The position numbers were made by a program, and so were the translations under genes. The notes beneath the pieces are model-generated. The model saw only the letters and a program-made list of their open reading frames with translations, had not been told where the DNA came from and made no database searches. This document shows positions 1-38,348 of a stretch of DNA of 64,000 nucleotides, piece by piece; the stretch's first letter is position 1; every line of letters starts with the position of its first letter. The stretch is taken from positions 62,001-126,000 of IMG/VR virus record IMGVR_UViG_3300044701_002789. One strand, written 5' to 3'.

Positions 1-6
1 GTCAAG

Positions 7-681: not shown

Positions 682-1095
682 TTATTTGCAGTCTTCTACC
701 CAAGGAGCACACATTCTTATTGGTCCTCCTAATGATTTACACTCTTCAGTATAACATGTGTCATTATTTATAGGTTCTTCAATGTACTTTGGTTCATATT
801 TTTTATTAGCTTCTTTAATAATTCTATCATACTCGGGAGTCACTTTTTCTATTGCTCTATCAATATCTCTATTGATTCTTCTCTCAAGTTTTTTGGGATC
901 TTTGATAATAAAATCATTAATAGGTGTACTAGGATTTACTTCTCTTTGAACTTCATCAAAGAAATCCCAAATAAGTTCTTCTTTAATTCCAGTACAATTA
1001 GATAAAAATGCAATTATAGAGGTAAGAACAACTCCTATAATTGCATAAGTTTTAATATCTGGTTTTTTATTTCCAAAATTAAATTTAAATTTCAT
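682..1095 (-). CDS. Hypothetical membrane or lipoprotein-like protein
   Basis: Basic N-terminus, hydrophobic stretch ending LSNC, Cys-rich C-terminus. Confidence 0.7.
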   Translation of the reverse strand: MKFKFNFGNKKPDIKTYAIIGVVLTSIIAFLSNCTGIKEELIWDFFDEVQREVNPSTPINDFIIKDPKKLERRINRDIDRAIEKVTPEYDRIIKEANKKYEPKYIEEPINNDTCYTEECKSLGGPIRMCAPWVEDCK

Positions 1096-1101: not shown

Positions 1102-1698
1102 TTATTTTTTCTTTAAGAGTGCTTTACGATATTGTAAATCGGTTCTAGTGCCGGAATCCATACGACCTTGATTAGGTTGATGCTCCCCTGGTTTAGCAGG
1201 ACTTCCAACTCCTTTATAAGAACGATGCGAATAAGCAGCACCACTATGTTTAGAATCACCAGAAATCATCTTTCCGCCTTGAGAACGAGAATTCATATAA
1301 TCAGTTTCTGATTGCCCATGCCTACCTCTCCATAATTCTTGAAGAATACTATCTCTCCAACCCTCACTCATATTTACCATCATTTGCTCTGCTGCTTCTG
1401 AGGTTTCAGCATATCCTTCATCAAGAAGATGGGAGAGGATTATATCGTAGAGGTCGTAACTTTCGCGGTTTGTGTTTTTCTTAACACCTCTTTTATCTGC
1501 ATGGATTTTTTTCCTTACTGGTTCACCTTGGGTGTCCCAATCAGCAGGATGTAAAATATTTTCAAAATCGCGGGATTGTCTGCGCCCTACTCTTTGTCTT
1601 TCAGTTGCATTTCTGTATTTCTCAAGTTTATTTGCCTCACCAAGTTCCTGATCTTGATAAACCTGCGAATAAGCTTCTACTAAATCTACTGCTTCCAT
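1102..1698 (-). CDS. Putative internal/virion protein with the acidic DLYDIIL..L.DEGYA domain
   Basis: Domain shared with the ORF at 4353-5864; late promoter TATAAATA at 1718-1725. Confidence 0.65.
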   Translation of the reverse strand: MEAVDLVEAYSQVYQDQELGEANKLEKYRNATERQRVGRRQSRDFENILHPADWDTQGEPVRKKIHADKRGVKKNTNRESYDLYDIILSHLLDEGYAETSEAAEQMMVNMSEGWRDSILQELWRGRHGQSETDYMNSRSQGGKMISGDSKHSGAAYSHRSYKGVGSPAKPGEHQPNQGRMDSGTRTDLQYRKALLKKK

Positions 1699-1724
1699 TT
1701 TAACAATACTTTTCTTTTATTTAT

Positions 1725-1748
1725 AAAAAAAGGGACCCTAAGGTCCCC
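1725..1748 (-). terminator. Intrinsic terminator after rlpA-like gene
   Basis: GGGACC-TTAG-GGTCCC followed by T7. Confidence 0.8.
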
Positions 1749-1757
1749 GCTAAAATA

Positions 1758-2117
1758 TCAAATCACCCGATAACAAACTCTTGCAACTCCATTACTCGGA
1801 GAAGCAATGGATGCAAATGCACCATAAGACAAATCTAAATCACGACTAGCAATAAATGGACCCCTATCAGTCACACGAACAACCACAGACCTACCATTGG
1901 ATTGGTTTGTAACACGAAGGCGAGTTCCAAAAGGAAGCCAACGATGTGCTACAGAATTACCATAAGCATTGAATACATTTCCACTGGCAGTTAATTGTCC
2001 GTGAAATCCATCACCAACTCCATAATGAGAAGCAGTGGTACATCCACTTGCTGCCTTAGACTCAATAGGCAAAAGAACAGAAGAAAGAATAGCAAGAATT
2101 GAAAGTGTTTTAAACAT
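1758..2117 (-). CDS. rlpA: RlpA-like double-psi beta-barrel lytic transglycosylase, with signal peptide
   Basis: ASHYG..FHGQLTASG..FN...VAHRWLPFGT.LRVTN..NGRSVVVRVTDRGPF...DLDLS motif. Confidence 0.88.
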   Translation of the reverse strand: MFKTLSILAILSSVLLPIESKAASGCTTASHYGVGDGFHGQLTASGNVFNAYGNSVAHRWLPFGTRLRVTNQSNGRSVVVRVTDRGPFIASRDLDLSYGAFASIASPSNGVARVCYRVI

Positions 2118-2134
2118 AATTGAACTTCCTCACA

Positions 2135-2761
2135 TCAAGAATCAATGGTCGTATACTCAAACTTATTGAGATACTGCATAGCATAAGTTTCTCTTGGTCC
2201 CTTGTGACCCCAACGAATCCACTTAAACGCAAGACGCATATAATCGTTGATAGTACCTCCAGGACGACTCATGCGGTCTCTAATCATCTTCCAGTCAGGT
2301 TCATAAAACATATATTGAACCTGAGTCTCTAAAGTTGATGTATTACCACCATACCTTTTAGCAAAATGACCTAGACCATTGTATCTTGTTGAATCGGTCC
2401 ATTGTAAGATTCCATAACCACCACGATGACACCTATGATATGGAACTCTTGCACCTCCCTCACAAATATTGGGAACAAAGGTAGATTCTTGTTTAAGATT
2501 ACCCATAATTGTAGCAATTGCTACTTTATCACGAATACCTTCATCTTGAAGTGCATTTAAAACATAATGTTCATTTTCATTACACCCGTTACAAGTTATC
2601 CGTCTTTCTTTTGGTGTTTCCGGAGCAACCTCTTTGGTCGCTGTCTCCTGAATTGTGCTAGTTTGATTTAAAGTAGCATAACTCGGTGTTGGCAGTGTTG
2701 CCGCTGATGTTGCAACCGCACCAAGAAGAGATACGGTCACAGTTGTAAGGTTTTTTAGCAT
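2135..2761 (-). CDS. Phage tail lysozyme-like muramidase with N-terminal signal sequence
   Basis: IMGNLKQES...GYGILQWT motif; hydrophobic N-terminus followed by a Thr/Pro-rich linker. Confidence 0.75.
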   Translation of the reverse strand: MLKNLTTVTVSLLGAVATSAATLPTPSYATLNQTSTIQETATKEVAPETPKERRITCNGCNENEHYVLNALQDEGIRDKVAIATIMGNLKQESTFVPNICEGGARVPYHRCHRGGYGILQWTDSTRYNGLGHFAKRYGGNTSTLETQVQYMFYEPDWKMIRDRMSRPGGTINDYMRLAFKWIRWGHKGPRETYAMQYLNKFEYTTIDS

Positions 2762-2770
2762 TTAGTTTAA

Positions 2771-2836
2771 TAGAACTCTACATCCGTTTAGAAGAAGGGG
2801 TACACCTCTTTTTAGGAGGCATCTTCCACGGCTCTA
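2771..2836 (-). promoter_or_regulatory. Structured 5' leader of the lysozyme-rlpA operon
   Basis: Nested helices TAGAG/TTCTA, CCGT/ACGG, GGAAGA/TCTTCT and CCTC/GAGG, ending about 10 nt before the ATG. Confidence 0.5.
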
Positions 2837-2860
2837 ATTTTCAAATCAAGGACTCATAAT

Positions 2861-2919
2861 AAAAAACCCTGCTCATAACAGGGAATTTACATGATAAGTG
2901 ATTATTTAGGTTTTGTCAA
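2861..2919 (-). promoter_or_regulatory. sigma70 promoter and CTAAATA late box immediately followed by an intrinsic terminator
   Basis: TTGACA (2914-2919), 17 nt, TATCAT (2891-2896); CCCTG/CAGGG + T6 at 2861-2883. Confidence 0.6.
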
Positions 2920-2924
2920 GAGAG

Positions 2925-3410
2925 TCACCTTCCAATCTGTCCACCTGAACGAGAAACACCAGTACCTCTACCACCAGGAACTGTTCCGTATCTTCCAGAC
3001 ACTCTGGTATCAGAAGGTTCTGCTGAACCAAGATCTTGACCAGTTTTTATGTTAGTCACTCGTCTTCTTTTGTTACCAGAAACTGTTCCAACAGAACTTG
3101 GCGAATCTGGTCCTATTCTACCTCTAACGCCAGTTTGAGCATATTGACTTCTATGAACTCTGCCAGAATCTTGCGCCCTTTGTGCTGCAGTTCTGGCAGG
3201 TTTACTCGCTTCGTGTCTTTGATCCTTATCGTTTATCGCCTTTGTTATTTGGGTGATTTTTCTTACAGATTTAGACATTGTTTGAGGATTTCTATCCCTT
3301 CGCAACTGAGCAACTTTTTGAGACGCTTTAGGTCTACCTTTTCCCCACCAGTCTATTGTTTCTTGCTCTGATTTTCTTGCTTCTAAAATAAACTCTCTAA
3401 AAGTTTTCAT
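2925..3410 (-). CDS. Putative capsid-targeted internal protein, Arg/Gly-rich
   Basis: N-terminus MKTFREFILEA resembles the T4 internal-protein capsid targeting sequence (MKTYQEFIAE); late box GATAAATA at 3427-3434. Confidence 0.6.
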   Translation of the reverse strand: MKTFREFILEARKSEQETIDWWGKGRPKASQKVAQLRRDRNPQTMSKSVRKITQITKAINDKDQRHEASKPARTAAQRAQDSGRVHRSQYAQTGVRGRIGPDSPSSVGTVSGNKRRRVTNIKTGQDLGSAEPSDTRVSGRYGTVPGGRGTGVSRSGGQIGR

Positions 3411-3436
3411 ATTACACTTTTAGAAATATTTATCAT

Positions 3437-3787
3437 TTAGACACTGCCTACAGTCTCATTTTCAGACCATTCATCATCATCTTTTTCAATAGAAAAGTAG
3501 TCAATTTCTTCAACACCTTCTGGAATGTTAATCCATTCCTCAAACTCCGCTTGAAGTGCCTTAGCATTACGATGCCTATCTGCTTCATGGAGAAGTTCAA
3601 TTTTCTTGATTGCCCAACCACGCACTTGATTGAGGCATTCATTTTCAATGTTGATGTCCAAGTTAGTTTCTTCCTCTTGTTTAATGGGAGTGGGTTCCTG
3701 AGGAACCTCCGACACCTTGGACTCTACCACATCCTGATCCCTTGTCAAGTGGTTGAGGAAGTTCTTAATCTTTCTGAAAAATTTCAT
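3437..3787 (-). CDS. Hypothetical protein
   Basis: 116-aa ORF on the coding strand, filling the intergenic space. Confidence 0.7.
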   Translation of the reverse strand: MKFFRKIKNFLNHLTRDQDVVESKVSEVPQEPTPIKQEEETNLDINIENECLNQVRGWAIKKIELLHEADRHRNAKALQAEFEEWINIPEGVEEIDYFSIEKDDDEWSENETVGSV

Positions 3788-3841
3788 TCCGTTTTTAATC
3801 TATATATGAACCTACATAGTCATATTAGCAATTCTTATCTA

Positions 3842-4267
3842 ATGACCTGGAAATATAACAATCAAGAGTTTACAGAAGTCCCAAAAGACATGGAAGGTTT
3901 TGTTTACCTTATTACAAATCTCACCAATGATAAAAAATACATTGGAAAGAAACACTTTTGGACAAGACAAAAAGATCGTAAAACAGGTCGCAGAAAAAAG
4001 AAAGAAAGTGATTGGAAAAAATATTTTGGTTCTTGTGATGAATTAATTGAAGACGTAAAAAATCTCGGAGAAGATAAATTTCTCCGAGAAATTTTATATC
4101 TATGTCCTCACAAGAAATCTATGAGTTTTTATGAGACTATGGAACAATTCAAAAGAGATGTAATTCTTAGAGAAGACTACTACAATACAAATGTTGAAGG
4201 TAAGTTCTTTAGTAGTGAAGTAGAGAATATTTATGAGATTGTTCTTAAAAGCTCTAAAGCTTTATAA
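3842..4267 (+). CDS. GIY-YIG family nuclease (141 aa); the only credible plus-strand gene in the window
   Basis: GFVYLITN...KYIGKK motif; start reassigned to ATG 3842 because the upstream extension overlaps another gene. Confidence 0.8.
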   Translation: MTWKYNNQEFTEVPKDMEGFVYLITNLTNDKKYIGKKHFWTRQKDRKTGRRKKKESDWKKYFGSCDELIEDVKNLGEDKFLREILYLCPHKKSMSFYETMEQFKRDVILREDYYNTNVEGKFFSSEVENIYEIVLKSSKAL

Positions 4268-4291
4268 ACCATCTTCAAAACCGACAAACCG

Positions 4292-4342
4292 ATCCTAGCA
4301 ATAAAAAAGGGTCTTGTCAAGACCCCTTAGAGATGTTATGAT
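4292..4342. promoter_or_regulatory. Overlapping divergent sigma70 promoters within a bidirectional hairpin
   Basis: Minus: TTGACA (4315-4320)-17-TAGGAT (4292-4297). Plus: TTGTCA (4314-4319)-17-TATGAT (4337-4342). Inverted repeat GGGTCTT/AAGACCC. Confidence 0.55.
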
Positions 4343-4352
4343 TGAAAAATAA

Positions 4353-5864
4353 TCATCTGCCAGATGCTCTCCTTCTGCGAGCACGATAATCAGTAGGAAC
4401 CTCCATATAACCAGATTTACCTTTACCGCGCCTAGAATGATCAATGGAATTTTCATAATCACCATCTGCCTGCTTATGTTCTATATTTTTTTCAGCATTT
4501 AATCTATTAATACTTTTTTTATTTGCTTTAATTCTTTCACGGTCTCTTCTATCATTATTATTTTCACTTTCACCAGATCTTCTTAATTGCGAACCACGTC
4601 TAACCTGTGCTTGAATTGAATCTTTCCATTTTGGTTTATTATACTTTGTTTTCCCATCTTTATCAGTAACTGAGCGAATATCATCTCCAGTAATTCTATT
4701 AGCAATAGATCTTTGAGATCCTCTAACTGATTCATCAAGAATTTCTTCTCTCCACTCTTCACTCATATTTGCCATAATTACAGTTGCTGCTTCCTCGGTA
4801 TCAGCATATCCTTCATCAATAAGATGCTCAAGGATTATATCATAAAGATCTACAGTATCTTCGGAAATATATGATTCTACAAGTTCATAGGTCTCATTGA
4901 CATCAAGATTTTCAATTAAATCATAAGCTTCACTTTCAGTACTAACATATCCTTCCGCAATTAGATCATCAATTAAGAGATCTAGGAGTTCAAAACTTTC
5001 CTTAGCAGTAAGTCTTGCTTCTCTTTTTCTTGCTTCTCGTCTAGACTTTTTATCTTTAAAGGTTCCTGCTGGTTGACCTTGTTGGGGTTCTGTAGGACCT
5101 TCTCCAGCTGCTGCATTTTCAAGTTTTTTAGCAGCGAGTGATCTTCTATTTGCGGTTACAGTTCTTCCTGGGGGAAGTGCGGGTCTTTCTTTAGCAGGTT
5201 GACCAACTCTTGGATTTTCTGGAGTTCCTTCTTTTGCTTTTGGTTTTGCTGCAGGAGTTTCTTTCGGTTCTACTTTAGCGGCAAGATTACGAAGACCACC
5301 AGCTGCTGCTTTTCTGCCAGACTTAATAAATCCTTTGATTTTTTCCTTTGCGGAAGCAAGTTTACCCTTAACCTTCTCAGCACCCCTTTGCACCTTTCTA
5401 CCTGCCTCAGCGGCGCCTCCAGCGGCGGCAGAGACTGCTCCACCAGCAAGAGTCTTTGCTCTACTTCCTGCTTCTTTTGCTCTATCGGAAATATTTTTAG
5501 CAGCGCGAGTAGTTGCAACTTGAAGTCTCTTTACTGCGTGCTTTCTACCAACTCTTTCACGCTCAGCAGACTTCATTCTAGTGGCAGTTGCTGCTGCAGA
5601 TTTCTTTTCTCTTGCCCTTTTATTTGCCAAACGATTCATTCTTGACATTTCACTTTCTTCAGAAAGAATCTCATAGTCAAATACTTCTAGGCATTCATTG
5701 AGTGTTACTTCTCTTTCTGAGAGAATTTCTTCCATAATTTGAGTTAATTCATTATCAGAAAGATCATCAATAAATTCAAAATTTTCTTCTACTGTCAGAA
5801 TATCTTCCCTAAGATCTTCATCATAAACAGCAGTATATGCTTCGTATAGATTAAAAGCGTTCAT
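4353..5864 (-). CDS. Putative internal/virion protein: repeated acidic EGY domains alternating with Ala/Lys/Arg-rich segments
   Basis: Internal repeats LIDDLIAEGY and LEHLIDEGY; late promoter TATAAATA at 5891-5898. Confidence 0.7.
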   Translation of the reverse strand: MNAFNLYEAYTAVYDEDLREDILTVEENFEFIDDLSDNELTQIMEEILSEREVTLNECLEVFDYEILSEESEMSRMNRLANKRAREKKSAAATATRMKSAERERVGRKHAVKRLQVATTRAAKNISDRAKEAGSRAKTLAGGAVSAAAGGAAEAGRKVQRGAEKVKGKLASAKEKIKGFIKSGRKAAAGGLRNLAAKVEPKETPAAKPKAKEGTPENPRVGQPAKERPALPPGRTVTANRRSLAAKKLENAAAGEGPTEPQQGQPAGTFKDKKSRREARKREARLTAKESFELLDLLIDDLIAEGYVSTESEAYDLIENLDVNETYELVESYISEDTVDLYDIILEHLIDEGYADTEEAATVIMANMSEEWREEILDESVRGSQRSIANRITGDDIRSVTDKDGKTKYNKPKWKDSIQAQVRRGSQLRRSGESENNNDRRDRERIKANKKSINRLNAEKNIEHKQADGDYENSIDHSRRGKGKSGYMEVPTDYRARRRRASGR

Positions 5865-5897
5865 TTTTTAATTCTTAGTTTACTTTTAGTTATTTAT

Positions 5898-5922
5898 AAA
5901 AAAGGGGAGTTATAAACTCCCC
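5898..5922 (-). terminator. Intrinsic terminator after nrdB
   Basis: GGGGAGTT-TAT-AACTCCCC followed by a T tract. Confidence 0.8.
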
Positions 5923-5929
5923 AAGTAAC

Positions 5930-7141
5930 TCAAAGTTTAAATCCAGCAAATGTATCATTTTTCATATCTTGTTTAATTCCACCAATCAAATACGTCTCCT
6001 GCTCCGTTTCCTGGGGTGCCACTTGAAGTCCTTTTGAATTAATCCAATGAGAAGTCCAAGGTAAGGGGTTATTATTAGCAGGAATATCATAAAGAGGTCT
6101 GAGACCAATCGCCCGCATACGACGATTAGCAATCCATTCAACATATTGCTGAAGAAGTTTATCATTAAGACCAATCATACTACCATCCTTGAAAAGATAG
6201 TCTGCCCATCTCTTTTCTTCATTTACAGCAAGATCAAACATTCTATAAACCCACTCTTCTTCCTCCTTAGCAATTTGTTGCATTTCTGGATCATCGCCTT
6301 CTCGCCATTTGTTAAGAATATTCTGAGTAATTGCTAGGTGTTGGTTTTCGTCTCTGGCGATAAGGGAAATGATCTTGGCGGATCCTTCCATAAGTTTAAG
6401 TTCACCAAAGGCGAAACTGCAAGCAAAACTAACGTAGAAGCGAATACCTTCAAGAATATTAACGTTTGCAATTGCTCTGTAGAGTTTTCGTTTGACATCG
6501 TTGAGATTTTCCTTTGCGTAATTGACTCCCTCAAGATTATGCTTCCATGTTTCGGAAGTACCATACTGTTGGGCAGAATTAATAAAATCATTATACGCTT
6601 CAGTTACACTCTTGGAACGAACCATAATATGCTCGTCCTTAATAATAGTATCAAACACATCAGAGGGATTTGAATAAACATTCTTGATAATATAAGTGTA
6701 TGAACGACTATGAATCATCTCCATAAATCCCCATACTTCCATACATGCCTCAAGTTCGGGTAGAGAACAGTAAGGAATGAATGCCATTCCCGGTCCTCTA
6801 CCCTGAATTGAATCCAGCATAATTTGATACTTCAAATTAGAAGTGTAAATATGCTTCTGTTCTGGGCGAAGTATTTGATAATCTCCACGATCCTTCTGTA
6901 AAGAAACCTCTTCTGGTCTCCAAAAGTATCCAAGTTGTTGAGTAGTAAGTTTCTCAAAAATTGGATACTTATAGGAATCATATCTCTGAACCCCCAATGG
7001 TTTCCCAAAAAACATTGGTTGCTTTTTAGTGTCCACTTCCTCAGTATTAAAAACCGTCATTCCTTTAACTTCTGTGGAATGATCTGTGGAAGATACCTTA
7101 AATTCCATGCTTGTTTCTTTCTGCGTAGTTTTATTTAACAT
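5930..7141 (-). CDS. nrdB: Ribonucleotide reductase class Ia beta subunit (start may be 7108)
   Basis: FWRPEEV, EMIHSRSY, EGIRFY and RDENQH di-iron motifs. Confidence 0.97.
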   Translation of the reverse strand: MLNKTTQKETSMEFKVSSTDHSTEVKGMTVFNTEEVDTKKQPMFFGKPLGVQRYDSYKYPIFEKLTTQQLGYFWRPEEVSLQKDRGDYQILRPEQKHIYTSNLKYQIMLDSIQGRGPGMAFIPYCSLPELEACMEVWGFMEMIHSRSYTYIIKNVYSNPSDVFDTIIKDEHIMVRSKSVTEAYNDFINSAQQYGTSETWKHNLEGVNYAKENLNDVKRKLYRAIANVNILEGIRFYVSFACSFAFGELKLMEGSAKIISLIARDENQHLAITQNILNKWREGDDPEMQQIAKEEEEWVYRMFDLAVNEEKRWADYLFKDGSMIGLNDKLLQQYVEWIANRRMRAIGLRPLYDIPANNNPLPWTSHWINSKGLQVAPQETEQETYLIGGIKQDMKNDTFAGFKL

Positions 7142-7144
7142 AAT

Positions 7145-9499: not shown

Positions 9500-10466
9500 A
9501 TTTTTTCCAATTAGTAAATTTGAGTTTTGCTTCCAACCCGAAATAGGTATTGGATTCTACCACATCCTGAACATTAAGTCCAGCAATGTACATTTGATTA
9601 ATATCCTTCTTGTCAATTGAAGAAGGCCAAATCACAACCTTTTCCCCACGATCAATACACTTTTCAATTCTAGAAATAATCTCTAGATTTCTGGGTTCAT
9701 TATCATAAATCCAAACCCTATCTCCAATATTAAGTTCTTCCACATTACCATCTGCTCCACAAAGAGCAATGCAGTTAGAAATAAACTCCGAATCAAATGG
9801 TCCCTCGGTAATGTAAACTGTCTTGTCTTTTTGTATATTATCAAGACCATAGATCTTCGGCGCATCTTCATCTAACATGATGGTGATGTATTTAACTAAT
9901 GGATTTGTTTTTAATGATCTTCCCTGAAACCCGATAAGTTCTTTATTGTAGAAAAGTGGTATTATTATCCTAGGTTCATCATATTTAACATTCTCAAAAG
10001 TTTGTTTAATTGAGTTAACCCATAGTTTAAATTTTTCAGTATAATAGAATTTATCTGAGTTTAATTTTCTACCTTCCAAATACTCTTTGGCAATTAGATT
10101 TTCTGATGCTTTTGGTAAATCTAATTTTTTACTAAATTTTGGTTTATCAAAGTTAAACTTGGGTTCTTCTACAACAAAATTTTTCCCAGTAAAACCAGAC
10201 TTAAATTTCTCCAAACAAAACTGCTTATGTAGAATTGGATCTATCTTTTTGAGAAAATTATTAAAAGACAAGTTTGCGCCACAATTGTGACACTTATAGT
10301 TCGTGTTACTTTTTATGGAATAAAAGTATCCCCTTGCCTTAGATTTATTCTTCTTAGAGTCCCCACAAATGGGACATCTACAATTATAAAGTCCGGGTTT
10401 AACTTTTTTAAATTTTTCTAGACGTGTTGACAATAGATTGATAAACTTATCATCAATCAAATTCAT
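9468..10466 (-). CDS. gp61: DNA primase gp61
   Basis: CPICGD...CHNC zinc ribbon; TOPRIM motif EGPFD. Confidence 0.93.
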   Translation of the reverse strand: MNLIDDKFINLLSTRLEKFKKVKPGLYNCRCPICGDSKKNKSKARGYFYSIKSNTNYKCHNCGANLSFNNFLKKIDPILHKQFCLEKFKSGFTGKNFVVEEPKFNFDKPKFSKKLDLPKASENLIAKEYLEGRKLNSDKFYYTEKFKLWVNSIKQTFENVKYDEPRIIIPLFYNKELIGFQGRSLKTNPLVKYITIMLDEDAPKIYGLDNIQKDKTVYITEGPFDSEFISNCIALCGADGNVEELNIGDRVWIYDNEPRNLEIISRIEKCIDRGEKVVIWPSSIDKKDINQMYIAGLNVQDVVESNTYFGLEAKLKFTNWKKYEQRNESKKA

Positions 10467-10468
10467 GA

Positions 10469-10858
10469 TCAGGGTTTCGGATTCTCCTGGATTATAACAG
10501 GAGTCGGGTCGGGTGTCAAGATGTCGCCAAATATATTATTTGGATTGTTGATTATTACGGTTAAAGCAATAATAATTCCCATACCAATCCACATCTTCTT
10601 TTCTATTTCTTGAATTCTAAGCAAAACTGCGTTATGATCGCTGTCCATTTTATCACGGAGTTTGTCAATCTTTGCAAATAATACTTCGTCCGCATTTTCT
10701 TGCTTTTGGATTTTTTGCTCATGTACCGCGAGTATTTTTCCTACGCTAATATTTACCTCGCTTAACTTTTCTATTGCATTATCTATTTTGACAACAACAT
10801 CTTTCAAGTCAACAAGTCTTTGCTCCAAAATAGCGACCTTTACAGATTCTTCTGACAT
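10469..10858 (-). CDS. Coiled-coil protein with a C-terminal transmembrane helix
   Basis: Heptad-rich body and MWIGMGIIIALTVII; start reassigned to ATG 10858. Confidence 0.7.
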   Translation of the reverse strand: MSEESVKVAILEQRLVDLKDVVVKIDNAIEKLSEVNISVGKILAVHEQKIQKQENADEVLFAKIDKLRDKMDSDHNAVLLRIQEIEKKMWIGMGIIIALTVIINNPNNIFGDILTPDPTPVIIQENPKP

Positions 10859-10868
10859 ATCCCATGCC

Positions 10869-10902
10869 CTTAGGTAAGTTTTTATCCTATAACTCACCTA
10901 AG
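10869..10902 (-). promoter_or_regulatory. 12-bp leader hairpin downstream of tandem late promoters (10921-10936)
   Basis: CTTAGGTGAGTT/AACTTACCTAAG with one G-U pair and a 10-nt loop. Confidence 0.5.
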
Positions 10903-10938
10903 CATTTAAACAGTCTAATATATTTATTTATTTATAAC

Positions 10939-11187
10939 TCACATCATACCCAAAGATTTCACCCAATCTTTGTATCTTTTGTTTACACTTCTTCCATCTA
11001 ATTTACCATTCTTTTTTTTGAAAAATGGAAGAGGATTAGATGTACCTGCATTAGGTCCACGAGAATCTGCATAAGCACTAAATCCTGCAGATCCATTAGG
11101 TGTTCCGGTATTCATAGATGGTCCACCTTCTTCTCTAAGATTCCTAAAATGTCTTACTATTATATCAGTTTTATCCATTTTTGTCAT
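10939..11187 (-). CDS. Hypothetical protein
   Basis: 82-aa ORF overlapping the upstream gene. Confidence 0.65.
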   Translation of the reverse strand: MTKMDKTDIIVRHFRNLREEGGPSMNTGTPNGSAGFSAYADSRGPNAGTSNPLPFFKKKNGKLDGRSVNKRYKDWVKSLGMM

Positions 11188-11557
11188 AGATTTTTTGAAG
11201 TTGTTCCAAACAAGTTATATCAACAAGTATATCGTGAATATAAGTCTTAGGGAACTCTGGAAGGCGATTCAGAAATAATATAATAGTTTTTACCTGAGAC
11301 CACATCTCTTTTTCAATTTTGAAAAATAACATAGGAGTTGTGGCCTCACCAAATATATTATAAAGAACAATAAAATGATTTATCAGTAAGTGGGTTTTTA
11401 AGATTCCCGTTTTTTTATATTTTTTCAGTAACCTCTTAATATATTTAAAATGATTTAAATCTTTTTGAAAATCATCTTTGGTTACTGCTTGAGGATTCTC
11501 GTAATTTTTTATTGCAAATAATAAAAAATTATCCTCATTCAATTCATTAAAAATCAT
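11171..11557 (-). CDS. Conserved T4-like hypothetical protein
   Basis: FAIKNYENP...FKYIKRLL...LLINH pattern; position upstream of primase as in cyanophages. Confidence 0.75.
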   Translation of the reverse strand: MIFNELNEDNFLLFAIKNYENPQAVTKDDFQKDLNHFKYIKRLLKKYKKTGILKTHLLINHFIVLYNIFGEATTPMLFFKIEKEMWSQVKTIILFLNRLPEFPKTYIHDILVDITCLEQLQKIYDKNG

Positions 11558-11567
11558 ATATTAATTA

Positions 11568-12431
11568 TCATGCGTAGGTAATTGTTGCTGCGGCAGAAAC
11601 AACTGAAACATCTCCAGAAACAATTTCAACAGTATATTCTCTTCCATCGTTTTTATCACTATCGTTTGCAACTGTAAGAATTGCAGTTTGAGTTCCAGAA
11701 TAATCTCCAGCATCAGAAAGTGCATTGGCATCCTCATACCACTGATAAGAAACTGGTGCATAGGAAGGAACTACAGTTACATCAACAGCAAATACTGCAT
11801 CTTCATCTGTTGCAATTCCAACCACATCTTCAGGGTCTGTCGTAATGGTGATGACTGCATCAGCAAAAACTACATCATCAGAAGCATCGCCAGAAGAAAT
11901 GTAAGAAGCAACGGTTCCGCTAGAAATTTCTGACATTGCAACAAGAGTTTCTGATTTAACTCTCAAATTGCCGTGCATATCAATATAAGTGTGGATTCCA
12001 ACCCAACCAGCATGAATACCACCATACTGTGTGGCAATTCCGGATGCTCCTGGGGACAAAAGACCAATTTCATACTTATCCACACCATAAACATCATGCT
12101 TAGGAATTGTGGTTGTTATTCCAACAACATTAGAAGAATAATTTGAATCTTCTAATGTGTAAATTGGTTTTTCTGATATTGTATATGCGACACCAGAAAT
12201 TACTGCACCAGTTAAGTATTGTGTGGTAGCAATAGCAATTAAACGGTCTGAAGTAATTCCAGAAATTACAGCAGACCCAAAAGTTCCACCAACTCCTATT
12301 GTTATTACATCGCCAGTAGAAATACCCGATGCAGTGAATGAAGTTGCAGATCCAATTATTTCTTTAGTTTCATAATTTACTTCTACAGTTCCTGTAGAAT
12401 AAAGACTATCTGCGATTCCCCAAAGTGCCAT
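11568..12431 (-). CDS. Virion structural protein with a C-terminal Ig-like domain
   Basis: MALWG start, beta-rich, VSYQWY Ig-like motif; late promoter TATAAATA at 12465-12472. Confidence 0.7.
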   Translation of the reverse strand: MALWGIADSLYSTGTVEVNYETKEIIGSATSFTASGISTGDVITIGVGGTFGSAVISGITSDRLIAIATTQYLTGAVISGVAYTISEKPIYTLEDSNYSSNVVGITTTIPKHDVYGVDKYEIGLLSPGASGIATQYGGIHAGWVGIHTYIDMHGNLRVKSETLVAMSEISSGTVASYISSGDASDDVVFADAVITITTDPEDVVGIATDEDAVFAVDVTVVPSYAPVSYQWYEDANALSDAGDYSGTQTAILTVANDSDKNDGREYTVEIVSGDVSVVSAAATITYA

Positions 12432-12472
12432 TCTTGTTACCTTTAACTAATTGTTTCGTAGAAGTATTTATA

Positions 12473-12501
12473 AAAAAGGAGAAGTATGTTACTTCTCCTT
12501 T
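12473..12501 (-). terminator. Intrinsic terminator
   Basis: GGAGAAGTA-ACA-TACTTCTCC followed by a T tract. Confidence 0.75.
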
Positions 12502-12668
12502 TCATTATTATTTTTTGTTGCCGCCACCAAAAAATGGTGTATAAATTGGTAAAGTGTATTTTCTTTTATATTTGGATTTCTTCCAATATATTCAGATAAT
12601 GCATATAGCACTGCAAAGAATATAGTTAGTCCACTATTTAATAGTAGACAACTATACCAAGTAATCAC
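12489..12668 (-). CDS. Small membrane protein (59 aa), possibly holin-like; not in the ORF track
   Basis: GTG start overlaps the upstream TGA (GTGA); translation MITWYSCLLLNSGLTIFFAVLYALSEYIGRNPNIKENTLYQFIHHFLVAATKNNNEKEK. Confidence 0.65.
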   Translation of the reverse strand: MITWYSCLLLNSGLTIFFAVLYALSEYIGRNPNIKENTLYQFIHHFLVAATKNNNEKEK

Positions 12669-12850
12669 TTCTCAGGGCAATTGGTGAGTAGTTTAGTTCT
12701 TACCATTTGTACTGCAACATTATCAATGTCATTATCAGTGCTTGCAGCATACTTTTCAAGAAGATGAATTACAAATCTTTTGACTTCACAACTTTGCCAG
12801 AACATACCGACAAGACTTTCACCTAATTTTACCAGCACATTAAAGTTCAT
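12665..12850 (-). CDS. Small hypothetical protein
   Basis: 61-aa ORF with GGAGG RBS; late box CTAAATA at 12881-12887. Confidence 0.7.
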   Translation of the reverse strand: MNFNVLVKLGESLVGMFWQSCEVKRFVIHLLEKYAASTDNDIDNVAVQMVRTKLLTNCPEK

Positions 12851-12891
12851 TGGTCTTCCTCCTATGGAAGTGGGTGTAATTATTTAGTATT

Positions 12892-15189
12892 TCAATCACC
12901 TGACCTATAACCACGAATTCCACCTAAACCATCTCTTGAATATACATCATTTTCATATTCTCTTGATGGAGTTGGTTTTGCTTTTTTTCGTGCAAGTCGC
13001 TGCATCGGAGTTGTTTGTTTTGGTTGTCCAGGTGGTTCATATCTACCAGGAACTCCTCTTCTTCTTCTATGTTGCGCGACAGTTCCGCCACTTCTAGTCA
13101 TCATCCCTTCAGGATTTTGTGCATCTTTAACTATTCGCATGGCTCTCCATGCAGGATCTTTTGTATTAGGTCTTGGTTGACCTTTTCTTGATCTTGCCCT
13201 TTCATCAATCATTTCACCTTCCATTTCGTAAGATTGATTTTGATTCTCTGAGGTTTCTGGTGGTTCAATTTTCTTCAATGCCTGCTGATTTGCCTTTGCA
13301 ACTTTTCCCTGCACTTGTGATAATTCTTTTTGGGTTTTTATTTGTTGTGGGGTTGTTGGATTCAAATCTTCTCTCAATCTAGATTGTTGCAATAACTTTT
13401 GAAGTAAACTTATAGTAGCGGCAGATTGTTGTCCTCTTGTTGTTCTAGGCGATTTCTGGCCAGAACTTCCTTTGGGATTAACAATTGCTTCATCTACTTT
13501 TTTGGGAATACCTTCATGCTTTGTTTTAGCAAAGTCACGAATTTTCTTTTCACTCATACTATCTACGATCTTAAGAACTTCAGCACTTGCTTCGGATCTT
13601 GGGGTTTCACCTCTTTTTACTGAAAGAGCAAGACCAAAAAGTTTTTGTTGCTGTTCACTTTCTGCCTTTTCGCAAATCATATTAAATTCTTCTTGAAGTT
13701 CACCAAATGTCCAATCGGAAAGGTCATATCCTTCATCAATCAAATAGGTAATCCACTCTCTAAAATGTGCAGTTCCTTGCTTTTTAAAAGCACCAGAAGC
13801 AGCACTTAGACCCCTACGGATTGCTTCTCCTGCATTTCCTCCAGATTTGCGGGTCTTCATCGCTTCTTTATGCCCTTCCCATGCAGATAAAACACCCCTA
13901 GCAATGGTATCTTTAATAGATCTTTTTTTATCTGGTTGAGATGAAGGTGCTTGAGTTTCTTTTGCCCGTTCAATATTTCTTTCCCTCTGCGAATCTTGTA
14001 ATCTTGTCAATACTTTTTGTCTTTCTGTTGGTTCGGGTTCTTGTTGTGTAGATTTTCTTGCAGATCTCCTTTTTTCATCTGCTGTTTTTTTTGTCGTAGC
14101 AGCACCACCTTTTAAATTAGATGCTCTTTTTCTAGATATTGGTTTTCCAGTAATTCTTTCTCTTGTTCTTGCAGGAAAAACAGTTTCTCCTGGTTTTAAT
14201 TTTCGTTCAATTAATAAACTATCTTCAGCAATATCAAATACCCATTCAACAAACTTTTCCTTTCCAAGTTCTTCAATAACAATTTCTACGCCATTCTCAT
14301 TTAACCCAAAGTTGTAGAAAAACTCAGTGGCAAGTTCAATAGCATTATCAAAATAAGACTCATCAAGTTCAACAGACTCAACAACATAACCACCAAGAAC
14401 AGAAATTTTTTCAGTAACTTCTGGTTTTAAATTTATAGTTTTATCTGCATAATTATCAACTTTTTTTTCTTTTATTTGTTTTTCATTTCGGGATGCTCTT
14501 TCATCAGCAACACCCAGAACTTCTTTAAGATCCTGACGCCAATCTGAAAATCCTTCACTCACTCCATATGTTTTTTTATTTTTAATGGCGTTGCTTCTAA
14601 CATTTCTGCGATTTGAAAGATACTTATCAGTTTTGGTATTAGATTTTCCATCATTATTAATATCACCGTCTTCTTGTCCAACTGGATCCAACTTACCTGC
14701 TCTAGATTTATCGTAATCATTTTTGGAACGATTACTACTAATTTCAACCGAACGAACTGTTGGTTTTGACCTTAATCTAGAAATTTCATCATATGGAACA
14801 TTTCTTTTATCTACAGTGCCATTTTGATAATTAATGGTCACATAAACCATTCTTGTTTCACTTTCTTCAGAAACTGCAACAGATCCACCAACTTTAATTC
14901 CTAGTTTTTCCTTTGCAGTCTTAATAACGTCTGCGCCATAATTTGTTTTTGAAGATCTCATTTGAAATGCCTTTTCTAGTGGAATATTATTTCTTTTCAT
15001 CAGATGACGAACATCATAGATAAATTGGCGAACTTTTTTTTCAAAAGTATCCACATCACCATCGTTATCCAAATCCGATGAAACTGGTTTAGATTTTTTG
15101 GGGGTAGATGCCCCAGGCTTCCCCAATTGTGGTTTAAAAACTTCTTCAAGATATGCGCTATGTAAATCAGTAGCAATATGAGAAAGCAT
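12892..15189 (-). CDS. Large mosaic virion/internal protein (DxDxDG motifs, EGY domain, DUF3008-like domain)
   Basis: DLDNDGDVD; DGDINNDG; YLIDEGYD; QQQKLFGLALSVKRGETP...MSEKKIRDFAKTK; late box ATAAATA at 15217-15223. Confidence 0.7.
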   Translation of the reverse strand: MLSHIATDLHSAYLEEVFKPQLGKPGASTPKKSKPVSSDLDNDGDVDTFEKKVRQFIYDVRHLMKRNNIPLEKAFQMRSSKTNYGADVIKTAKEKLGIKVGGSVAVSEESETRMVYVTINYQNGTVDKRNVPYDEISRLRSKPTVRSVEISSNRSKNDYDKSRAGKLDPVGQEDGDINNDGKSNTKTDKYLSNRRNVRSNAIKNKKTYGVSEGFSDWRQDLKEVLGVADERASRNEKQIKEKKVDNYADKTINLKPEVTEKISVLGGYVVESVELDESYFDNAIELATEFFYNFGLNENGVEIVIEELGKEKFVEWVFDIAEDSLLIERKLKPGETVFPARTRERITGKPISRKRASNLKGGAATTKKTADEKRRSARKSTQQEPEPTERQKVLTRLQDSQRERNIERAKETQAPSSQPDKKRSIKDTIARGVLSAWEGHKEAMKTRKSGGNAGEAIRRGLSAASGAFKKQGTAHFREWITYLIDEGYDLSDWTFGELQEEFNMICEKAESEQQQKLFGLALSVKRGETPRSEASAEVLKIVDSMSEKKIRDFAKTKHEGIPKKVDEAIVNPKGSSGQKSPRTTRGQQSAATISLLQKLLQQSRLREDLNPTTPQQIKTQKELSQVQGKVAKANQQALKKIEPPETSENQNQSYEMEGEMIDERARSRKGQPRPNTKDPAWRAMRIVKDAQNPEGMMTRSGGTVAQHRRRRGVPGRYEPPGQPKQTTPMQRLARKKAKPTPSREYENDVYSRDGLGGIRGYRSGD

Positions 15190-15193
15190 CTTC

Positions 15194-15787
15194 TTATTTT
15201 CGGTTAACTTTATACTTATTTATGAATTTCCTTATATTAAAATCTTTTATTTTTTTAGTTCCAGTCATATCCATAGTATACTGACGATAAGAATCTGTTC
15301 CAGTCTCTCGTTGATCTGCAGGAACTCCAGACTTATCAGTCCACTCAATGACATCTTTAATCCAAGGTTTAAACATCACACTATCTTCAGTGACGCAAAT
15401 TAAATAATTTGTACCTCTACGAATTATCTTTCCAACCAATCCATTATTCAAATTTTCTACCAAATCACCCTCATTAAATATTTCACCATTAATATACTTT
15501 TCTCTAAGATTTTTTTCGTATTCTTCCGAAACTTGATGAGAAGCAGGAACTAAAGGTGACGGTTTAGATCTATCTTGATCCGGATCTCGCTTTCCTGCTC
15601 TTTGATTTTTATTTGAAAATTTTATTCTAATTCCATTTGATTCAGTTTCAGATTCTCCCTCATACTCTCCAGTTTTTGGATTGTACCAACCACCATGACC
15701 ATCAGGAACTAATCCCAATCTCATGGCAGTAAGTTTTGCAAAATTTGGTTTATTTGCTTCTTTAATAAATTGGGAGAATTTTTTCAT
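15194..15787 (-). CDS. Homologue of the cyanophage 'cytidylyltransferase' locus lacking the catalytic domain; capsid-targeting-like N-terminus
   Basis: MKKFSQFIKEA, LGL..DGHGGW and GLVGKIIRRGTNYLICVTE are present; no FGRFNPP..GH motif. Confidence 0.6.
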   Translation of the reverse strand: MKKFSQFIKEANKPNFAKLTAMRLGLVPDGHGGWYNPKTGEYEGESETESNGIRIKFSNKNQRAGKRDPDQDRSKPSPLVPASHQVSEEYEKNLREKYINGEIFNEGDLVENLNNGLVGKIIRRGTNYLICVTEDSVMFKPWIKDVIEWTDKSGVPADQRETGTDSYRQYTMDMTGTKKIKDFNIRKFINKYKVNRK

Positions 15788-15820
15788 ATATTTTTGATTA
15801 TAATTATATTTATTGATACG

Positions 15821-15843: not shown

Positions 15844-15855
15844 TTTATTTACTAT

Positions 15856-36896: not shown

Positions 36897-38348
36897 TCAC
36901 ATAAGGTTGCGAACTTGTACTCTTCTATAGTATACGTTGCTATTAGGATTAATAGCACCCATACCTTGTGTACGACCTTCCGCAAATGGGTTAGCAACAA
37001 GACCGTAACGAGTCTTGAATCCAATTTTTGGTTGGAAGCTGTTCTCACCAACGGCACGAACCATTTGGAGAGGAACATAAGGACAATAGAAGAGTCCAGC
37101 GTCATAAGGAGAAGAACCCTTATAACCAACAACGTAATACTGGTTAGAACTTACGTTTGCAGCATATGGGTCAATATAGACACGGAACTTACCGAGAAGA
37201 ACACCAGCAAAGGTGTTACCAGTGTCATCAACGTTGAGATTTGCATTAAGAGCAGGAGTGTAATCAAGTACACCAGCCATGCTTAGAGCAGAAGCAACGT
37301 CAGCAGAGCACATGATAACATTACCCTTTCCTCTACGTGTTTGCTGCGCAATAGCGTTAGCGTCACGCTCAATTTGGAAAAGGAGACCTTTGAACTTCTC
37401 AACAGACCAACGACCGTTGGAGTCAACATCAAGGTCAAATGCACCAGCAGTTGCTACGTTTGCCTGAGCACCAGGACGTGCAACCTTGTAAATGGTACGG
37501 ATAACTTCACGGTTAATTTCAGCAAGAATTTCGCTAGACAAAATGTTAGCGAGTTCTGCTTCAGCATTAAGACCATGAATTGCCTTAAGGTCTTGAGCAA
37601 GTTCAAGACTGTACTCAGCTTTCAAAGCACGGGACTTTGCTTCAACGAGAACTTTCTCAATAGAGAAGTTCATTTCGTTGAACTGAGAGTTACCGTAACC
37701 GAGACCTTCTGCGTCAGCAGTGCTCATACCCTGACCAGTGGTATAGGCAAGTTGACCATCTGGGTTCAAGAGACCAGGGTTATCGTTGAAGTTACCTGGG
37801 CTGTTGTTTACACCAGCATTTGTAGTACCGAATCCTACAGTAGATCCAGAACCAACTCTTGCACCATCTACAGATGTGTACTGACCTTGATCTAAATCAA
37901 ACTGACTATTCTGTGCGGAATATGCGGTATCTACTTCGTCGTATAGGTTTTCTGGACCTTGACCTTGGACTTTACCATAGCGTGAACGCATAGCAAAGAT
38001 AAGACCAGTAGGACCATTCATTGGTTGAACGCCAGCGAGGTCATAAGCGACCAAGTTAGGCATTGAACGACGAATGAGACTAATGAGAACGGGGTCAAAA
38101 CCTGCAACTGGGCCTTCAGATGCGGCATAACCACTAAATCCAGCAGAAGTGCCAGAAGCAGTGCTCATGGATGGGGTTTCTGTCAAGAACTCACCATGAG
38201 AGAATGAATTCTGTTCTCTTAAAAATCTTTCTTGGTTTTCGAGCAAGACAGCGGTTACAGCTCTTCTGTGCGAATCTTTGATAGGATCTAATCCATCAAA
38301 GTCAAGAAGCGGTGCCCACTTTTCTTGCAATCTTTCGGATTGAAACAT
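36897..38348 (-). CDS. gp23: Major capsid protein gp23
   Basis: VQPMNGPTGLIFAMR, SRALKAEYSLELAQDLKAIHG, FYCPYVPL. Confidence 0.98.
   Translation of the reverse strand: MFQSERLQEKWAPLLDFDGLDPIKDSHRRAVTAVLLENQERFLREQNSFSHGEFLTETPSMSTASGTSAGFSGYAASEGPVAGFDPVLISLIRRSMPNLVAYDLAGVQPMNGPTGLIFAMRSRYGKVQGQGPENLYDEVDTAYSAQNSQFDLDQGQYTSVDGARVGSGSTVGFGTTNAGVNNSPGNFNDNPGLLNPDGQLAYTTGQGMSTADAEGLGYGNSQFNEMNFSIEKVLVEAKSRALKAEYSLELAQDLKAIHGLNAEAELANILSSEILAEINREVIRTIYKVARPGAQANVATAGAFDLDVDSNGRWSVEKFKGLLFQIERDANAIAQQTRRGKGNVIMCSADVASALSMAGVLDYTPALNANLNVDDTGNTFAGVLLGKFRVYIDPYAANVSSNQYYVVGYKGSSPYDAGLFYCPYVPLQMVRAVGENSFQPKIGFKTRYGLVANPFAEGRTQGMGAINPNSNVYYRRVQVRNLM

What the first reader, a model, noticed from the sequence alone, without database searches (positions are those of the whole stretch)
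1102..15787. Family of putative capsid-targeted, protease-cleavable internal proteins
Seen: two ORFs start with near matches to the T4 internal-protein targeting peptide (MKTFREFILEA at 3410; MKKFSQFIKEA at 15787). Three ORFs (1102-1698, 4353-5864, 12892-15189) share an acidic L(I/L)DEGY domain that ends in hydrophobic-x-Glu and is followed by very basic, low-complexity segments (FILE|ARK, ILDE|SVRG, MIDE|RARSRK). Each has a late promoter. Established: T4 gp21 cleaves after (I/L)-x-E, and T4 internal proteins are injected with the DNA, with IPI* blocking GmrSD restriction. Inference: a large arsenal of packaged polyproteins released as basic peptides, which may condense DNA or act as injected counter-defence effectors.
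Basis: partly seen in the sequence, partly recalled or inferred. Interest (0 to 1): 0.62.

Follow-up and report, generated by a model that had tools for sequence, protein, structure and literature searches.

The report
Cyanophage internal head proteins, T4-type leader
A large T4-like cyanophage carries late genes whose products start with the same short "address label" that phage T4 uses to load proteins into its head. This probably explains how several puzzling virion proteins of marine cyanophages get packaged, but cleavage and function are still untested.

Summary

- **Leader:** ORFs B (2925-3410) and E (15194-15787) begin MKTFREFILE|A and MKKFSQFIKE|A. They match T4's capsid-targeting sequence (CTS) at the residues T4 needs for targeting (4, 7) and processing (8, 10).
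- **Specificity:** the same DNA pattern finds only ipII, ipIII and gp61.1 in T4. The leader is essentially invariant in about 60 homologues of E and 53 of B. It also heads over 100 otherwise unrelated, mostly basic ORFs on T4-like cyanophage contigs.
- **E:** a short form of the cyanophage core protein T4-GC190 ("cytidylyltransferase"), found by mass spectrometry in S-SM1, S-SCSM1 and S-CREM2 virions. The enzyme domain is missing here.
- **A, C, D:** A and C share a real three-helix "EGY" domain of about 40 residues. D shares only an 8-residue word. None has the leader, but their relatives are virion proteins in S-SCSM1 and S-SM1.
- **Machinery:** the gp21 protease and the gp23 FLTE cleavage motif are conserved. 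All five ORFs have NATAAATA late-promoter motifs.

Best reading: internal head proteins imported by a conserved CTS and trimmed by gp21. New members of a known kind.

The parts
2925..3410 (-). ORF B, 161 aa, pI 11.5: CTS-like leader plus a variable middle and a conserved Gly/Arg/Ser-rich C-terminal part. It is the best candidate for a T4-style basic internal protein; the predicted mature form (residues 11-161) has pI 11.6.
   Evidence: no hit in isolate phages, but 53 unnamed clusters in metagenomes
3381..3410 (-). Leader of B, residues 1-10 (MKTFREFILE, followed by A). 9 of 12 residues are identical to T4 IPII.
   Evidence: K2, T3, F7, L9, E10 and A11 are at least 90% conserved in 53 homologues
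3427..3434 (-). Late-promoter-like GATAAATA upstream of B
15194..15787 (-). ORF E, 197 aa: short form of the cyanophage core virion protein T4-GC190. It has the leader, a small N-terminal beta domain and a C-terminal SH3-like (KOW/Tudor-type) barrel. The central nucleotidyltransferase domain of the long forms is absent.
   Evidence: virion MS of homologues
15758..15787 (-). Leader of E, residues 1-10 (MKKFSQFIKE, followed by A)
15807..15814 (-). Late-promoter-like AATAAATA upstream of E, preceded by a stem-loop with a T run
1102..1698 (-). ORF A, 198 aa: N-terminal helix with LVE|AY, a disordered linker, an EGY three-helix domain and a basic tail (residues 121-198, pI 10.1). Homologue of the S-SCSM1 ORF89 virion protein.
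1342..1458 (-). EGY domain of A (residues 81-119); pLDDT above 90 in the model
1718..1725 (-). TATAAATA late-promoter motif upstream of A, directly after the terminator-like stem-loop at 1731-1748
4353..5864 (-). ORF C, 503 aa mosaic: acidic 1-72 (pI 4.05), basic 73-284 (pI 11.6), two EGY copies in 285-378 (pI 4.05), basic tail 379-503 (pI 10.7). It is bracketed by terminator-like hairpins.
4737..4994 (-). The two EGY domain copies of C (residues 291-321 and 338-376)
5891..5898 (-). TATAAATA late-promoter motif upstream of C, after the stem-loop at 5904-5922
12892..15189 (-). ORF D, 765 aa mosaic. The N-part resembles T4-GC191 and S-SCSM1 ORF92, with DxDxDG...KYL motifs. Then come an acidic helical block, basic stretches, its own LIDEGY motif, DUF3008, a Q-rich stretch and a basic tail (664-765, pI 11.5).
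13495..13665 (-). DUF3008 (PF11450) inside D, residues 509-565. In S-SCSM1 it is a separate 69-aa virion protein (ORF93).
13666..13767 (-). D's conserved F.EW..LIDEGYDLS motif (residues 475-508). Homology to the A/C EGY domain is inconclusive.
15217..15224 (-). CATAAATA late-promoter-like motif upstream of D, inside the 3' end of E
39664..40311 (-). gp21 prohead protease (Peptidase_S77), the presumed processing enzyme
38403..39605 (-). gp22 scaffolding core protein, the presumed docking partner of the leader (inferred from T4)
38178..38189 (-). FLTE in gp23 (residues 54-57). It aligns exactly with T4 gp23 FLTE, which ends at Glu65, the known gp21 cleavage site.
10939..12431 (-). Further genes of the same virion-protein islet between primase and MazG: 10939-11187 (like S-SCSM1 ORF97 and S-SM1 GC426) and 11568-12431 (like S-SCSM1 ORF95 and S-SM1 GC425)

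Best explanation
The window comes from a 258-kb T4-like cyanophage; psbA lies elsewhere in the genome. B and E are late proteins that start with a 10-residue leader, the cyanophage counterpart of the T4 capsid-targeting sequence (CTS). Most likely the leader, predicted to be a short helix, docks the proteins onto the gp22 scaffolding core while the prohead assembles. The gp21 protease then cuts after Glu10, and the mature proteins stay in the head with the DNA and leave with it at infection. B matures to a very basic, largely low-complexity protein (pI 11.6) that resembles T4 IPII/IPIII in kind but not in sequence. E is the carrier part of the cyanophage virion protein T4-GC190: leader, small beta domain and KOW/Tudor-like barrel. 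In this phage it has no nucleotidyltransferase cargo. A, C and D lack the leader. They are mosaics of acidic helical modules and basic disordered stretches. They are probably also prohead-core or internal proteins, possibly docked through their conserved N-termini, which contain LxE|A. They would be cut at (L/I)xE module boundaries, so that basic fragments remain with the DNA. Shown: the sequence features, their conservation and modularity, presence of the protease, late-promoter motifs, and virion association of homologues. Inferred: docking, cleavage, internal location, ejection and any function after ejection.
For: Leader match to T4. Positions 4 and 7 are aromatic, position 8 is Ile and position 10 is Glu, followed by Ala. 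T4 mutagenesis maps targeting to positions 4 and 7 and processing to positions 8 and 10 (PMC9026906). B is 9/12 identical to IPII. Specificity. The pattern finds ipII, ipIII and gp61.1 in T4 and 1-3 ORFs per cyanophage, with reversed-pattern controls at 0. Codons differ at synonymous sites, so selection acts on the peptide. Conservation. 63 of 71 T4-GC190 ORFs carry the strict leader, and the rest are one-residue variants or fragments; K2, F7 and E10 are invariant and F4 nearly so (48 of 51) among the leader-bearing ORFs. The leader is at least 90% conserved in 53 B homologues, whose next ~60 residues vary freely. Portability. An IMG/VR scan for MKTF.EFI.EA gave at least 119 hits. 79 of 80 ORFs have no upstream in-frame Met, and 74 of 79 loci share genes with this phage. 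The bodies belong to many unrelated families, mostly pI 9.4-11.5. One ORF, L066:4321-5436, joins the leader, an EGY domain and a basic tail. Virion presence. T4-GC190 gave 25 peptides in S-SM1 and was found in S-SCSM1 and S-CREM2. S-SCSM1 ORF89, 92 and 93, relatives of A, D and DUF3008, are virion proteins. S-SM1 GC1454 and GC1455, relatives of C and D, are too. Machinery. gp21 is present (E 2e-37; 43% identical to T4 gp21), and gp23 FLTE aligns with the T4 cleavage site. Timing. NATAAATA lies upstream of all five ORFs.
Against: No cyanophage data show cleavage after Glu10 or a location inside the capsid. T4-GC190 was not detected in the older S-PM2 and Syn9 proteomes. The S-SCSM1 and S-CREM2 authors caution that abundant late proteins could co-purify with virions. 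T4 gp61.1 carries the same leader and is not annotated as a head protein in the T4 record, so the leader alone may not be diagnostic. A, C and D have no leader, and D's EGY match is not significant. [LI]xE is common in acidic helices, and A's proposed site lies inside a predicted helix, so the boundary sites could be structural rather than cleavage sites. The mature parts show no similarity to any T4 head protein.
Confidence: 0.65

Rival explanations
1. A, C and D, and possibly E, are assembly-only prohead core or scaffold accessory proteins, functional analogues of T4 gp67 and gp68. They are chopped by gp21 and mostly expelled before DNA packaging. They are not an injected arsenal; any fragments left behind are by-products.
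For: Their acidic helical modules joined to basic stretches resemble the T4 gp68 and gp67 layout (sequences, charge maps). N-terminal LxE|A motifs resemble those of T4 gp22, gp67 and gp21. The T4-GC numbers of the EGY-type proteins and of PSSM2_195 (207 and 191) do not appear among the detected proteins in the proteome table.
Against: Relatives were detected in mature virions of S-SCSM1 and S-SM1 with several peptides each. There is no sequence similarity to gp67, gp68 or gp22. The basic fragments would plausibly be held by DNA.
Confidence: 0.2
2. These are virion proteins that are not internal, for example neck, tail or capsid-surface components. The leader would then be a conserved assembly helix unrelated to core targeting.
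For: Neighbouring islet genes are annotated as tail-fibre or S-layer-like virion proteins. E ends in an SH3-like barrel, a common protein-binding fold in virion parts.
Against: The leader matches the T4 CTS at exactly the mapped functional positions. It is attached to many unrelated, highly basic, disordered bodies, which is unlike ordered external parts. Structured external proteins rarely have pI 11 and low complexity.
Confidence: 0.1
3. These are abundant late, non-structural DNA-binding proteins that co-purify with virions. The N-terminal motif would serve expression or turnover, not packaging.
For: The S-SCSM1 and S-CREM2 authors raise co-purification as a possibility. The proteins are basic and would stick to DNA. 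A late Hc1 histone-like gene sits nearby.
Against: Detection recurs in independent phages, laboratories and purification runs. Synonymous variation in the leader codons argues against an mRNA-level signal. The invariant Glu10-Ala/Ser junction fits a protease site.
Confidence: 0.05

Closest known systems
T4 internal proteins IPII and IPIII (and IPI) with the capsid-targeting sequence
   Same: They have an N-terminal 10-residue leader of the same consensus (M-K-T-aromatic-x-E/Q-F-I/L-x-E, then Ala). The bodies are basic and unrelated to each other. They are late genes in a genome with gp21, gp22 and gp23. The leader is portable across diverse cargo.
   Different: The mature parts show no sequence similarity. 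Position 4 is Phe rather than Tyr. Cargo types differ: Gly/Arg-rich proteins and the T4-GC190 carrier. Packaging, cleavage and ejection are experimentally shown in T4 and untested here.
Cyanophage core protein T4-GC190 ('cytidylyltransferase' / NMNAT-like virion protein; PSSM2_194, SSM1_190, S-SCSM1 ORF91)
   Same: E aligns with its N-terminal region (leader plus GHGGWY block) and its C-terminal barrel. The locus is the same, between MazG and primase.
   Different: E lacks the central PF01467 domain, and the whole genome has none. Short forms of 552-570 nt also occur in P-HM1, P-HM2 and Syn1. The literature did not link this protein to a CTS.
T4 prohead core proteins gp67 and gp68, and packaged Alt
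   Same: They combine acidic helical and basic segments and are cut by gp21 at (L/I)xE. Alt is a packaged enzyme trimmed at both ends.
   Different: There is no detectable homology. The EGY domain and the DxDxDG...KYL motifs have no T4 counterpart.
Ejection / inner-body proteins of giant phages (phiKZ, SPN3US)
   Same: Many head-internal proteins are processed after Glu by a gp21-related protease, and paralogues share identical N-terminal propeptides.
   Different: The cleavage motif differs (A/S-x-E), the propeptides are unrelated and the head architecture is different.
DUF3008 (PF11450)
   Same: D residues 509-565 match the whole model (E 6.8e-12). The stand-alone version is a virion protein in S-SCSM1.
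   Different: Here it is embedded in a 765-aa mosaic protein. The family has no known function.

Membership tests
T4-type CTS-bearing internal head proteins | N-terminal ~10-residue leader with aromatic residues at 4 and 7, Ile/Leu at 8, Glu at 10 and a small residue at 11 | tested here: met
   Met for B and E. Not met for A, C and D, whose N-termini are different.
T4-type CTS-bearing internal head proteins | The genome encodes a gp21-type prohead protease and a gp22 scaffold, and the (L/I)xE cleavage specificity is conserved | tested here: met
   PF03420 hit E 2e-37, 43% identity to T4 gp21, gp22 homologue present, gp23 FLTE aligned with the T4 cleavage site. The specificity itself is inferred.
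T4-type CTS-bearing internal head proteins | The leader is removed by the prohead protease | not testable with these tools
   Needs N-terminal sequencing or semi-tryptic MS. Published cyanophage proteomes used tryptic searches.
T4-type CTS-bearing internal head proteins | The protein is present in the mature virion, inside the head | tested here: inconclusive
   Homologues of E, A, C and D are in virion proteomes of S-SM1, S-SCSM1 and S-CREM2. The location within the particle is unknown. There are no data for B's family or for this phage.
T4-type CTS-bearing internal head proteins | The leader is portable: the same leader sits on unrelated bodies | tested here: met
   At least 119 IMG/VR matches across many unrelated body families, nearly all on T4-like cyanophage contigs.
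T4-type CTS-bearing internal head proteins | Late expression | tested here: inconclusive
   NATAAATA motifs lie 23-35 nt upstream of all five ORFs, with strong strand bias (10 vs 0 TATAAATA). No transcript data.
T4-type CTS-bearing internal head proteins | Ejection into the host with the DNA | not testable with these tools
   Experimental only.
T4-GC190 cytidylyltransferase / NMNAT-like | Nucleotidyltransferase domain (PF01467) | tested here: not met
   E has no Pfam hit, and the genome has no PF01467 match. PSSM2_194 has one at residues 120-236. E belongs to the gene family by its N- and C-terminal regions, but it is not an enzyme.
EGY-domain mosaic proteins (phrog_3708 / phrog_1418 group) | ~40-residue three-helix domain (..D.hLe.L..EGYA.T.e.A...M.NMSE.W...I) | tested here: met
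   A (E 4e-20) and C (two copies) are met. D is not met (E 11).
DUF3008 (PF11450) | Full-length match above the gathering score | tested here: met
   D residues 509-565, 45.8 bits against a cut-off of 24.
T4 gp67/gp68 prohead core proteins | Sequence homology | tested here: not met
   BLAST and HMM gave only noise. The resemblance is architectural only.

The most novel reading that the evidence does not exclude
The T4 capsid-targeting leader is an ancient, portable import tag conserved across the T4 superfamily. Marine T4-like cyanophages use it to load an exchangeable cargo set into the head for co-injection. The set would include Gly/Arg-rich DNA-binding proteins, the T4-GC190 carrier with or without an NMNAT-type enzyme, and other candidate enzymes seen on related contigs. 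The leaderless EGY and D-type mosaics would be true polyproteins that gp21 cuts into acidic docking modules, which are expelled, and basic peptides, which stay on the DNA. The interval between MazG and primase, which holds gp61.1 in T4, would be a conserved internal-protein islet.
Probability: 0.4. Interest if true: 0.75.

Novelty: new member of a known kind. Interest (0 to 1): 0.6.

Why it matters
Several cyanophage proteome papers report an NMNAT/cytidylyltransferase-like protein and neighbouring unknown proteins in purified virions. They leave open whether these are truly packaged. A T4-type capsid-targeting leader on that protein family gives a concrete, testable packaging mechanism. It extends the CTS system from T-even coliphages to the distant and ecologically dominant marine cyanomyoviruses. 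It also defines a simple sequence rule for listing candidate injected proteins in ocean viromes. Some of these may act in the first seconds of infection, for instance in DNA condensation or counter-defence. The rule also suggests a tool for loading foreign proteins into cyanophage heads.

Tried and rejected
- **Complex prediction**, gp21 with residues 1-40 of B: no verdict (score 0.00). This is not evidence either way.
- **Foldseek against PDB:** for E only weak KOW/Tudor/SH3-like hits (E about 1e-3 to 1e-2), used as a fold lead only. For A nothing meaningful (E above 2).
- **PDB sequence searches** for D, C and the E family: nothing.
- **Pfam:** no hits for A, B, C or E.
- **ESM Atlas for A:** only unnamed viral clusters and a low-confidence model.
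- **tblastn of B against isolate phages:** no match. Relatives were found only in metagenomes.
- **D as an EGY-domain protein:** rejected as unproven.
- **Homology of EGY, B or D to T4 gp67, gp68, gp22 or the IPs:** none beyond the leader.
- **Searching the Sullivan 2010 supplements** for leader strings: nothing found. The S-SCSM1 supplement holds no peptide-level data.
- **Literature searches** for a CTS or internal proteins in cyanophages returned only T4 reviews.
- **Chance resemblance of the leader:** rejected on the controls.

Full report
**Context.** The window is bases 62001-126000 of a complete 258,284-bp virus record. It carries nrdA/nrdB, primase gp61, helicase gp41, UvsX and MazG. 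It also has a T4-type head module: gp20, gp21, gp22 and gp23 at 36.9-42.5 kb. psbA lies elsewhere in the genome. DNA and protein searches place it among T4-like cyanomyoviruses such as P-SSM2, P-SSM5, S-SCSM1 and S-SRM01. All flagged ORFs are on the minus strand. I call them A (1102-1698), B (2925-3410), C (4353-5864), D (12892-15189) and E (15194-15787).

**The leader is real and specific.** B starts MKTFREFILE|A and E starts MKKFSQFIKE|A.
- They are the only ORFs in the genome that fit MK.[FYW]..[FYW][ILVM].E at the N-terminus.
- A third ORF outside the window, G000:42681-43256, 191 aa and pI 10.4, has the same leader but Asp at position 10.
- A back-translated DNA pattern finds exactly ipII, ipIII and gp61.1 in T4, B and E here, and one to three ORFs in P-SSM2, S-SCSM1, Sf-CH5 and S-SM1. 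The reversed pattern finds nothing in any of them.
- T4 genetics maps capsid targeting to CTS residues 4 and 7 and processing to residues 8 and 10 (PMC9026906). These are the best-conserved positions here.
- The matched codons differ at synonymous sites, so the peptide is what is conserved.

**The leader is conserved within families and portable between them.**
- E is a member of the cyanophage core family T4-GC190. Its ends align with PSSM2_194, S-SCSM1 ORF91 and SfCH5_126, but the central nucleotidyltransferase domain is missing.
- The genome has no PF01467 domain at all.
- Among 71 family ORFs from 80 IMG/VR loci, 63 carry the strict leader. The others are one-residue variants, alternative starts or fragments. 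K2, F7 and E10 are invariant and F4 nearly so (48 of 51), position 8 is L, I or F, and position 11 is mostly A, S or T.
- B has no relative in isolate phages but has 53 unnamed clusters in metagenomes. There the leader is at least 90% conserved, the next ~60 residues vary with indels, and a Gly/Arg/Ser-rich C-terminal part is conserved.
- In the 80 loci, 91 of 2152 ORFs start with the motif against 0.15 expected.
79 of 80 ORFs have no upstream in-frame Met, and 74 of 79 loci share genes with this phage. The bodies fall into many unrelated families of 60-438 aa, mostly with pI 9.4-11.5.
- This pattern of a conserved leader on diverse basic bodies is what is described for T-even internal proteins (PMC3012670).

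**Virion evidence from relatives.**
- Sullivan et al. 2010 detected T4-GC190 in purified S-SM1 virions with 25 peptides.
- In S-SM1 the whole MazG-primase interval is a run of virion proteins: GC1453, GC190, GC1454, GC1455, GC425 and GC426.
- GC1454 and GC1455 share motifs and architecture with C and D.
- In S-SCSM1, ORF89 (relative of A), ORF91 (relative of E, called NMNAT), ORF92 (relative of D) and ORF93 (DUF3008, embedded in D) are virion proteins. So are ORF95 and ORF97, which are relatives of window ORFs 11568-12431 and 10939-11187.
- S-CREM2 virions also contain the cytidylyltransferase and the genes next to it.
- Those authors could not say whether the enzyme is truly packaged. I found no paper linking it to a CTS.

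**Processing machinery and timing.**
- The window's gp21 is a Peptidase_S77 (E 2e-37) and 43% identical to T4 gp21 across the conserved blocks.
- gp23 aligns with T4 gp23 so that its FLTE (residues 54-57) sits on T4's FLTE ending at Glu65, the established maturation cleavage site.
- NATAAATA motifs lie 23-35 nt upstream of all five ORFs. TATAAATA occurs 10 times on the minus strand and never on the plus strand of the window.
- A and C each sit behind a hairpin, a T run and then TATAAATA, and B and C are followed by terminator-like hairpins.

**The EGY claim is only partly right.**
- A and C share a 47-residue stretch (64% identity, E 4e-18) and similar N-termini.
- An HMM iterated over 4698 ORFs finds A, two copies in C, S-SCSM1 ORF89, PSSM2_212, SfCH5_137 and about 24 metagenomic ORFs. 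It does not find D (E 11).
- D has its own conserved motif around LIDEGYDLS, just before DUF3008. Profile-profile comparison with EGY is inconclusive: probability 48% over 15 columns.
- The AlphaFold model of A shows a long N-terminal helix, a disordered linker, a confident three-helix EGY unit (pLDDT above 90) and a disordered tail.
- About 24 of 29 EGY domains end in [LIV]xE followed by basic or low-complexity sequence. The family N-terminus (M-D-x-K-x-L-x-x-L-x-E-A-Y) also contains LxE|A. Both fit gp21 sites but do not prove them.
- Charge maps confirm the alternating acidic and basic modules.
- One metagenomic ORF combines leader, EGY domain and basic tail, which ties the two features together.

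**Interpretation.**
- B and E are best explained as CTS-bearing internal head proteins. I put this at about 0.75.
- For A, C and D, virion association is likely. Internal location and polyprotein-like processing are plausible but unproven; I put this at about 0.45.
- E's C-terminal domain is an SH3-like barrel with weak KOW/Tudor matches. Its role is open: it may bind DNA or protein.
- Nothing here speaks to counter-defence.
- The system works like the T4 IP/CTS system, and the leader-bearing proteins pass every membership test that sequence can address. Cleavage, internal location and ejection remain experimental questions.

Noticed in passing
window 454-657 (-), with TATAAATA at 670-677: A small ORF matches the chlamydial histone H1-like protein Hc1 (PF07432, E 1.7e-16) and has its own late-promoter motif. 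It is a possible further DNA-condensing late protein next to A.
   Followed up: partly
L021:267-431 (T4 NC_000866 18966-19130, gene 61.1): T4 gp61.1 (54 aa, function unknown) starts MKTFKEFIKE, a CTS-like leader. It lies next to primase gene 61, in the interval that holds the virion-protein islet in cyanophages. It may be an unrecognised T4 head protein or a remnant.
   Followed up: partly
G000:C1:42681-43256 (-), outside the window: A third leader-bearing basic ORF in the same genome (191 aa, pI 10.4) starts MKTFKQFMADA, with Asp at position 10. In T4 that change allows targeting but blocks cleavage.
   Followed up: partly
L084:9431-9880, L136, L152, L161, L108 and others: One leader-bearing family (130-220 aa, pI about 10) has a conserved YHGTS...IKKSGF block after the leader. 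It may be a small packaged enzyme. Pfam gave no hit.
   Followed up: partly
L149, L172, L138 (IMG/VR): Another leader-bearing family (134-140 aa) has a YGPGLYGNPTASG block, which resembles DPBB/RlpA-type wall-binding domains.
   Followed up: no
window 3833-4267 (+): A SegE-type GIY-YIG homing endonuclease (PF19835, E 2.3e-38) is the only clear plus-strand gene in the region. It is inserted between B and C.
   Followed up: partly
window 1758-2117 (-) and 2135-2761 (-): A DPBB_1 lytic-transglycosylase-like protein and a Phage_lysozyme2 protein lie between A and B. Both have signal-peptide-like N-termini.
   Followed up: no
whole genome G000: There is no PF01467 nucleotidyltransferase domain anywhere in the genome, so this phage has only the enzyme-less carrier form of T4-GC190. 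Sullivan's table lists short forms in P-HM1, P-HM2 and Syn1.
   Followed up: yes
L003:9627-9833 (S-SCSM1 ORF93, DUF3008): This stand-alone DUF3008 virion protein ends in RTFKEFLEYIE, a leader-like motif at its C-terminus. It could be chance, or a C-terminal propeptide like that of T4 Alt.
   Followed up: no
window 1731-1748, 5904-5922, 12474-12502, 15823-15846: Hairpin plus T-run elements run directly into NATAAATA motifs upstream of A, C, ORF 11568-12431 and E. They resemble the composite terminator-promoter cassettes described in T4-like phages.
   Followed up: partly
window 6-80 (-) and 263-345 (-): tRNA-Arg(TCT) and tRNA-Leu(TAA) genes lie at the start of the window.
   Followed up: no
window 682-1095 (-): A 137-aa ORF (phrog_3316) between A and the Hc1-like gene has a hydrophobic N-terminus ending in a lipobox-like LSNC.
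   Followed up: no
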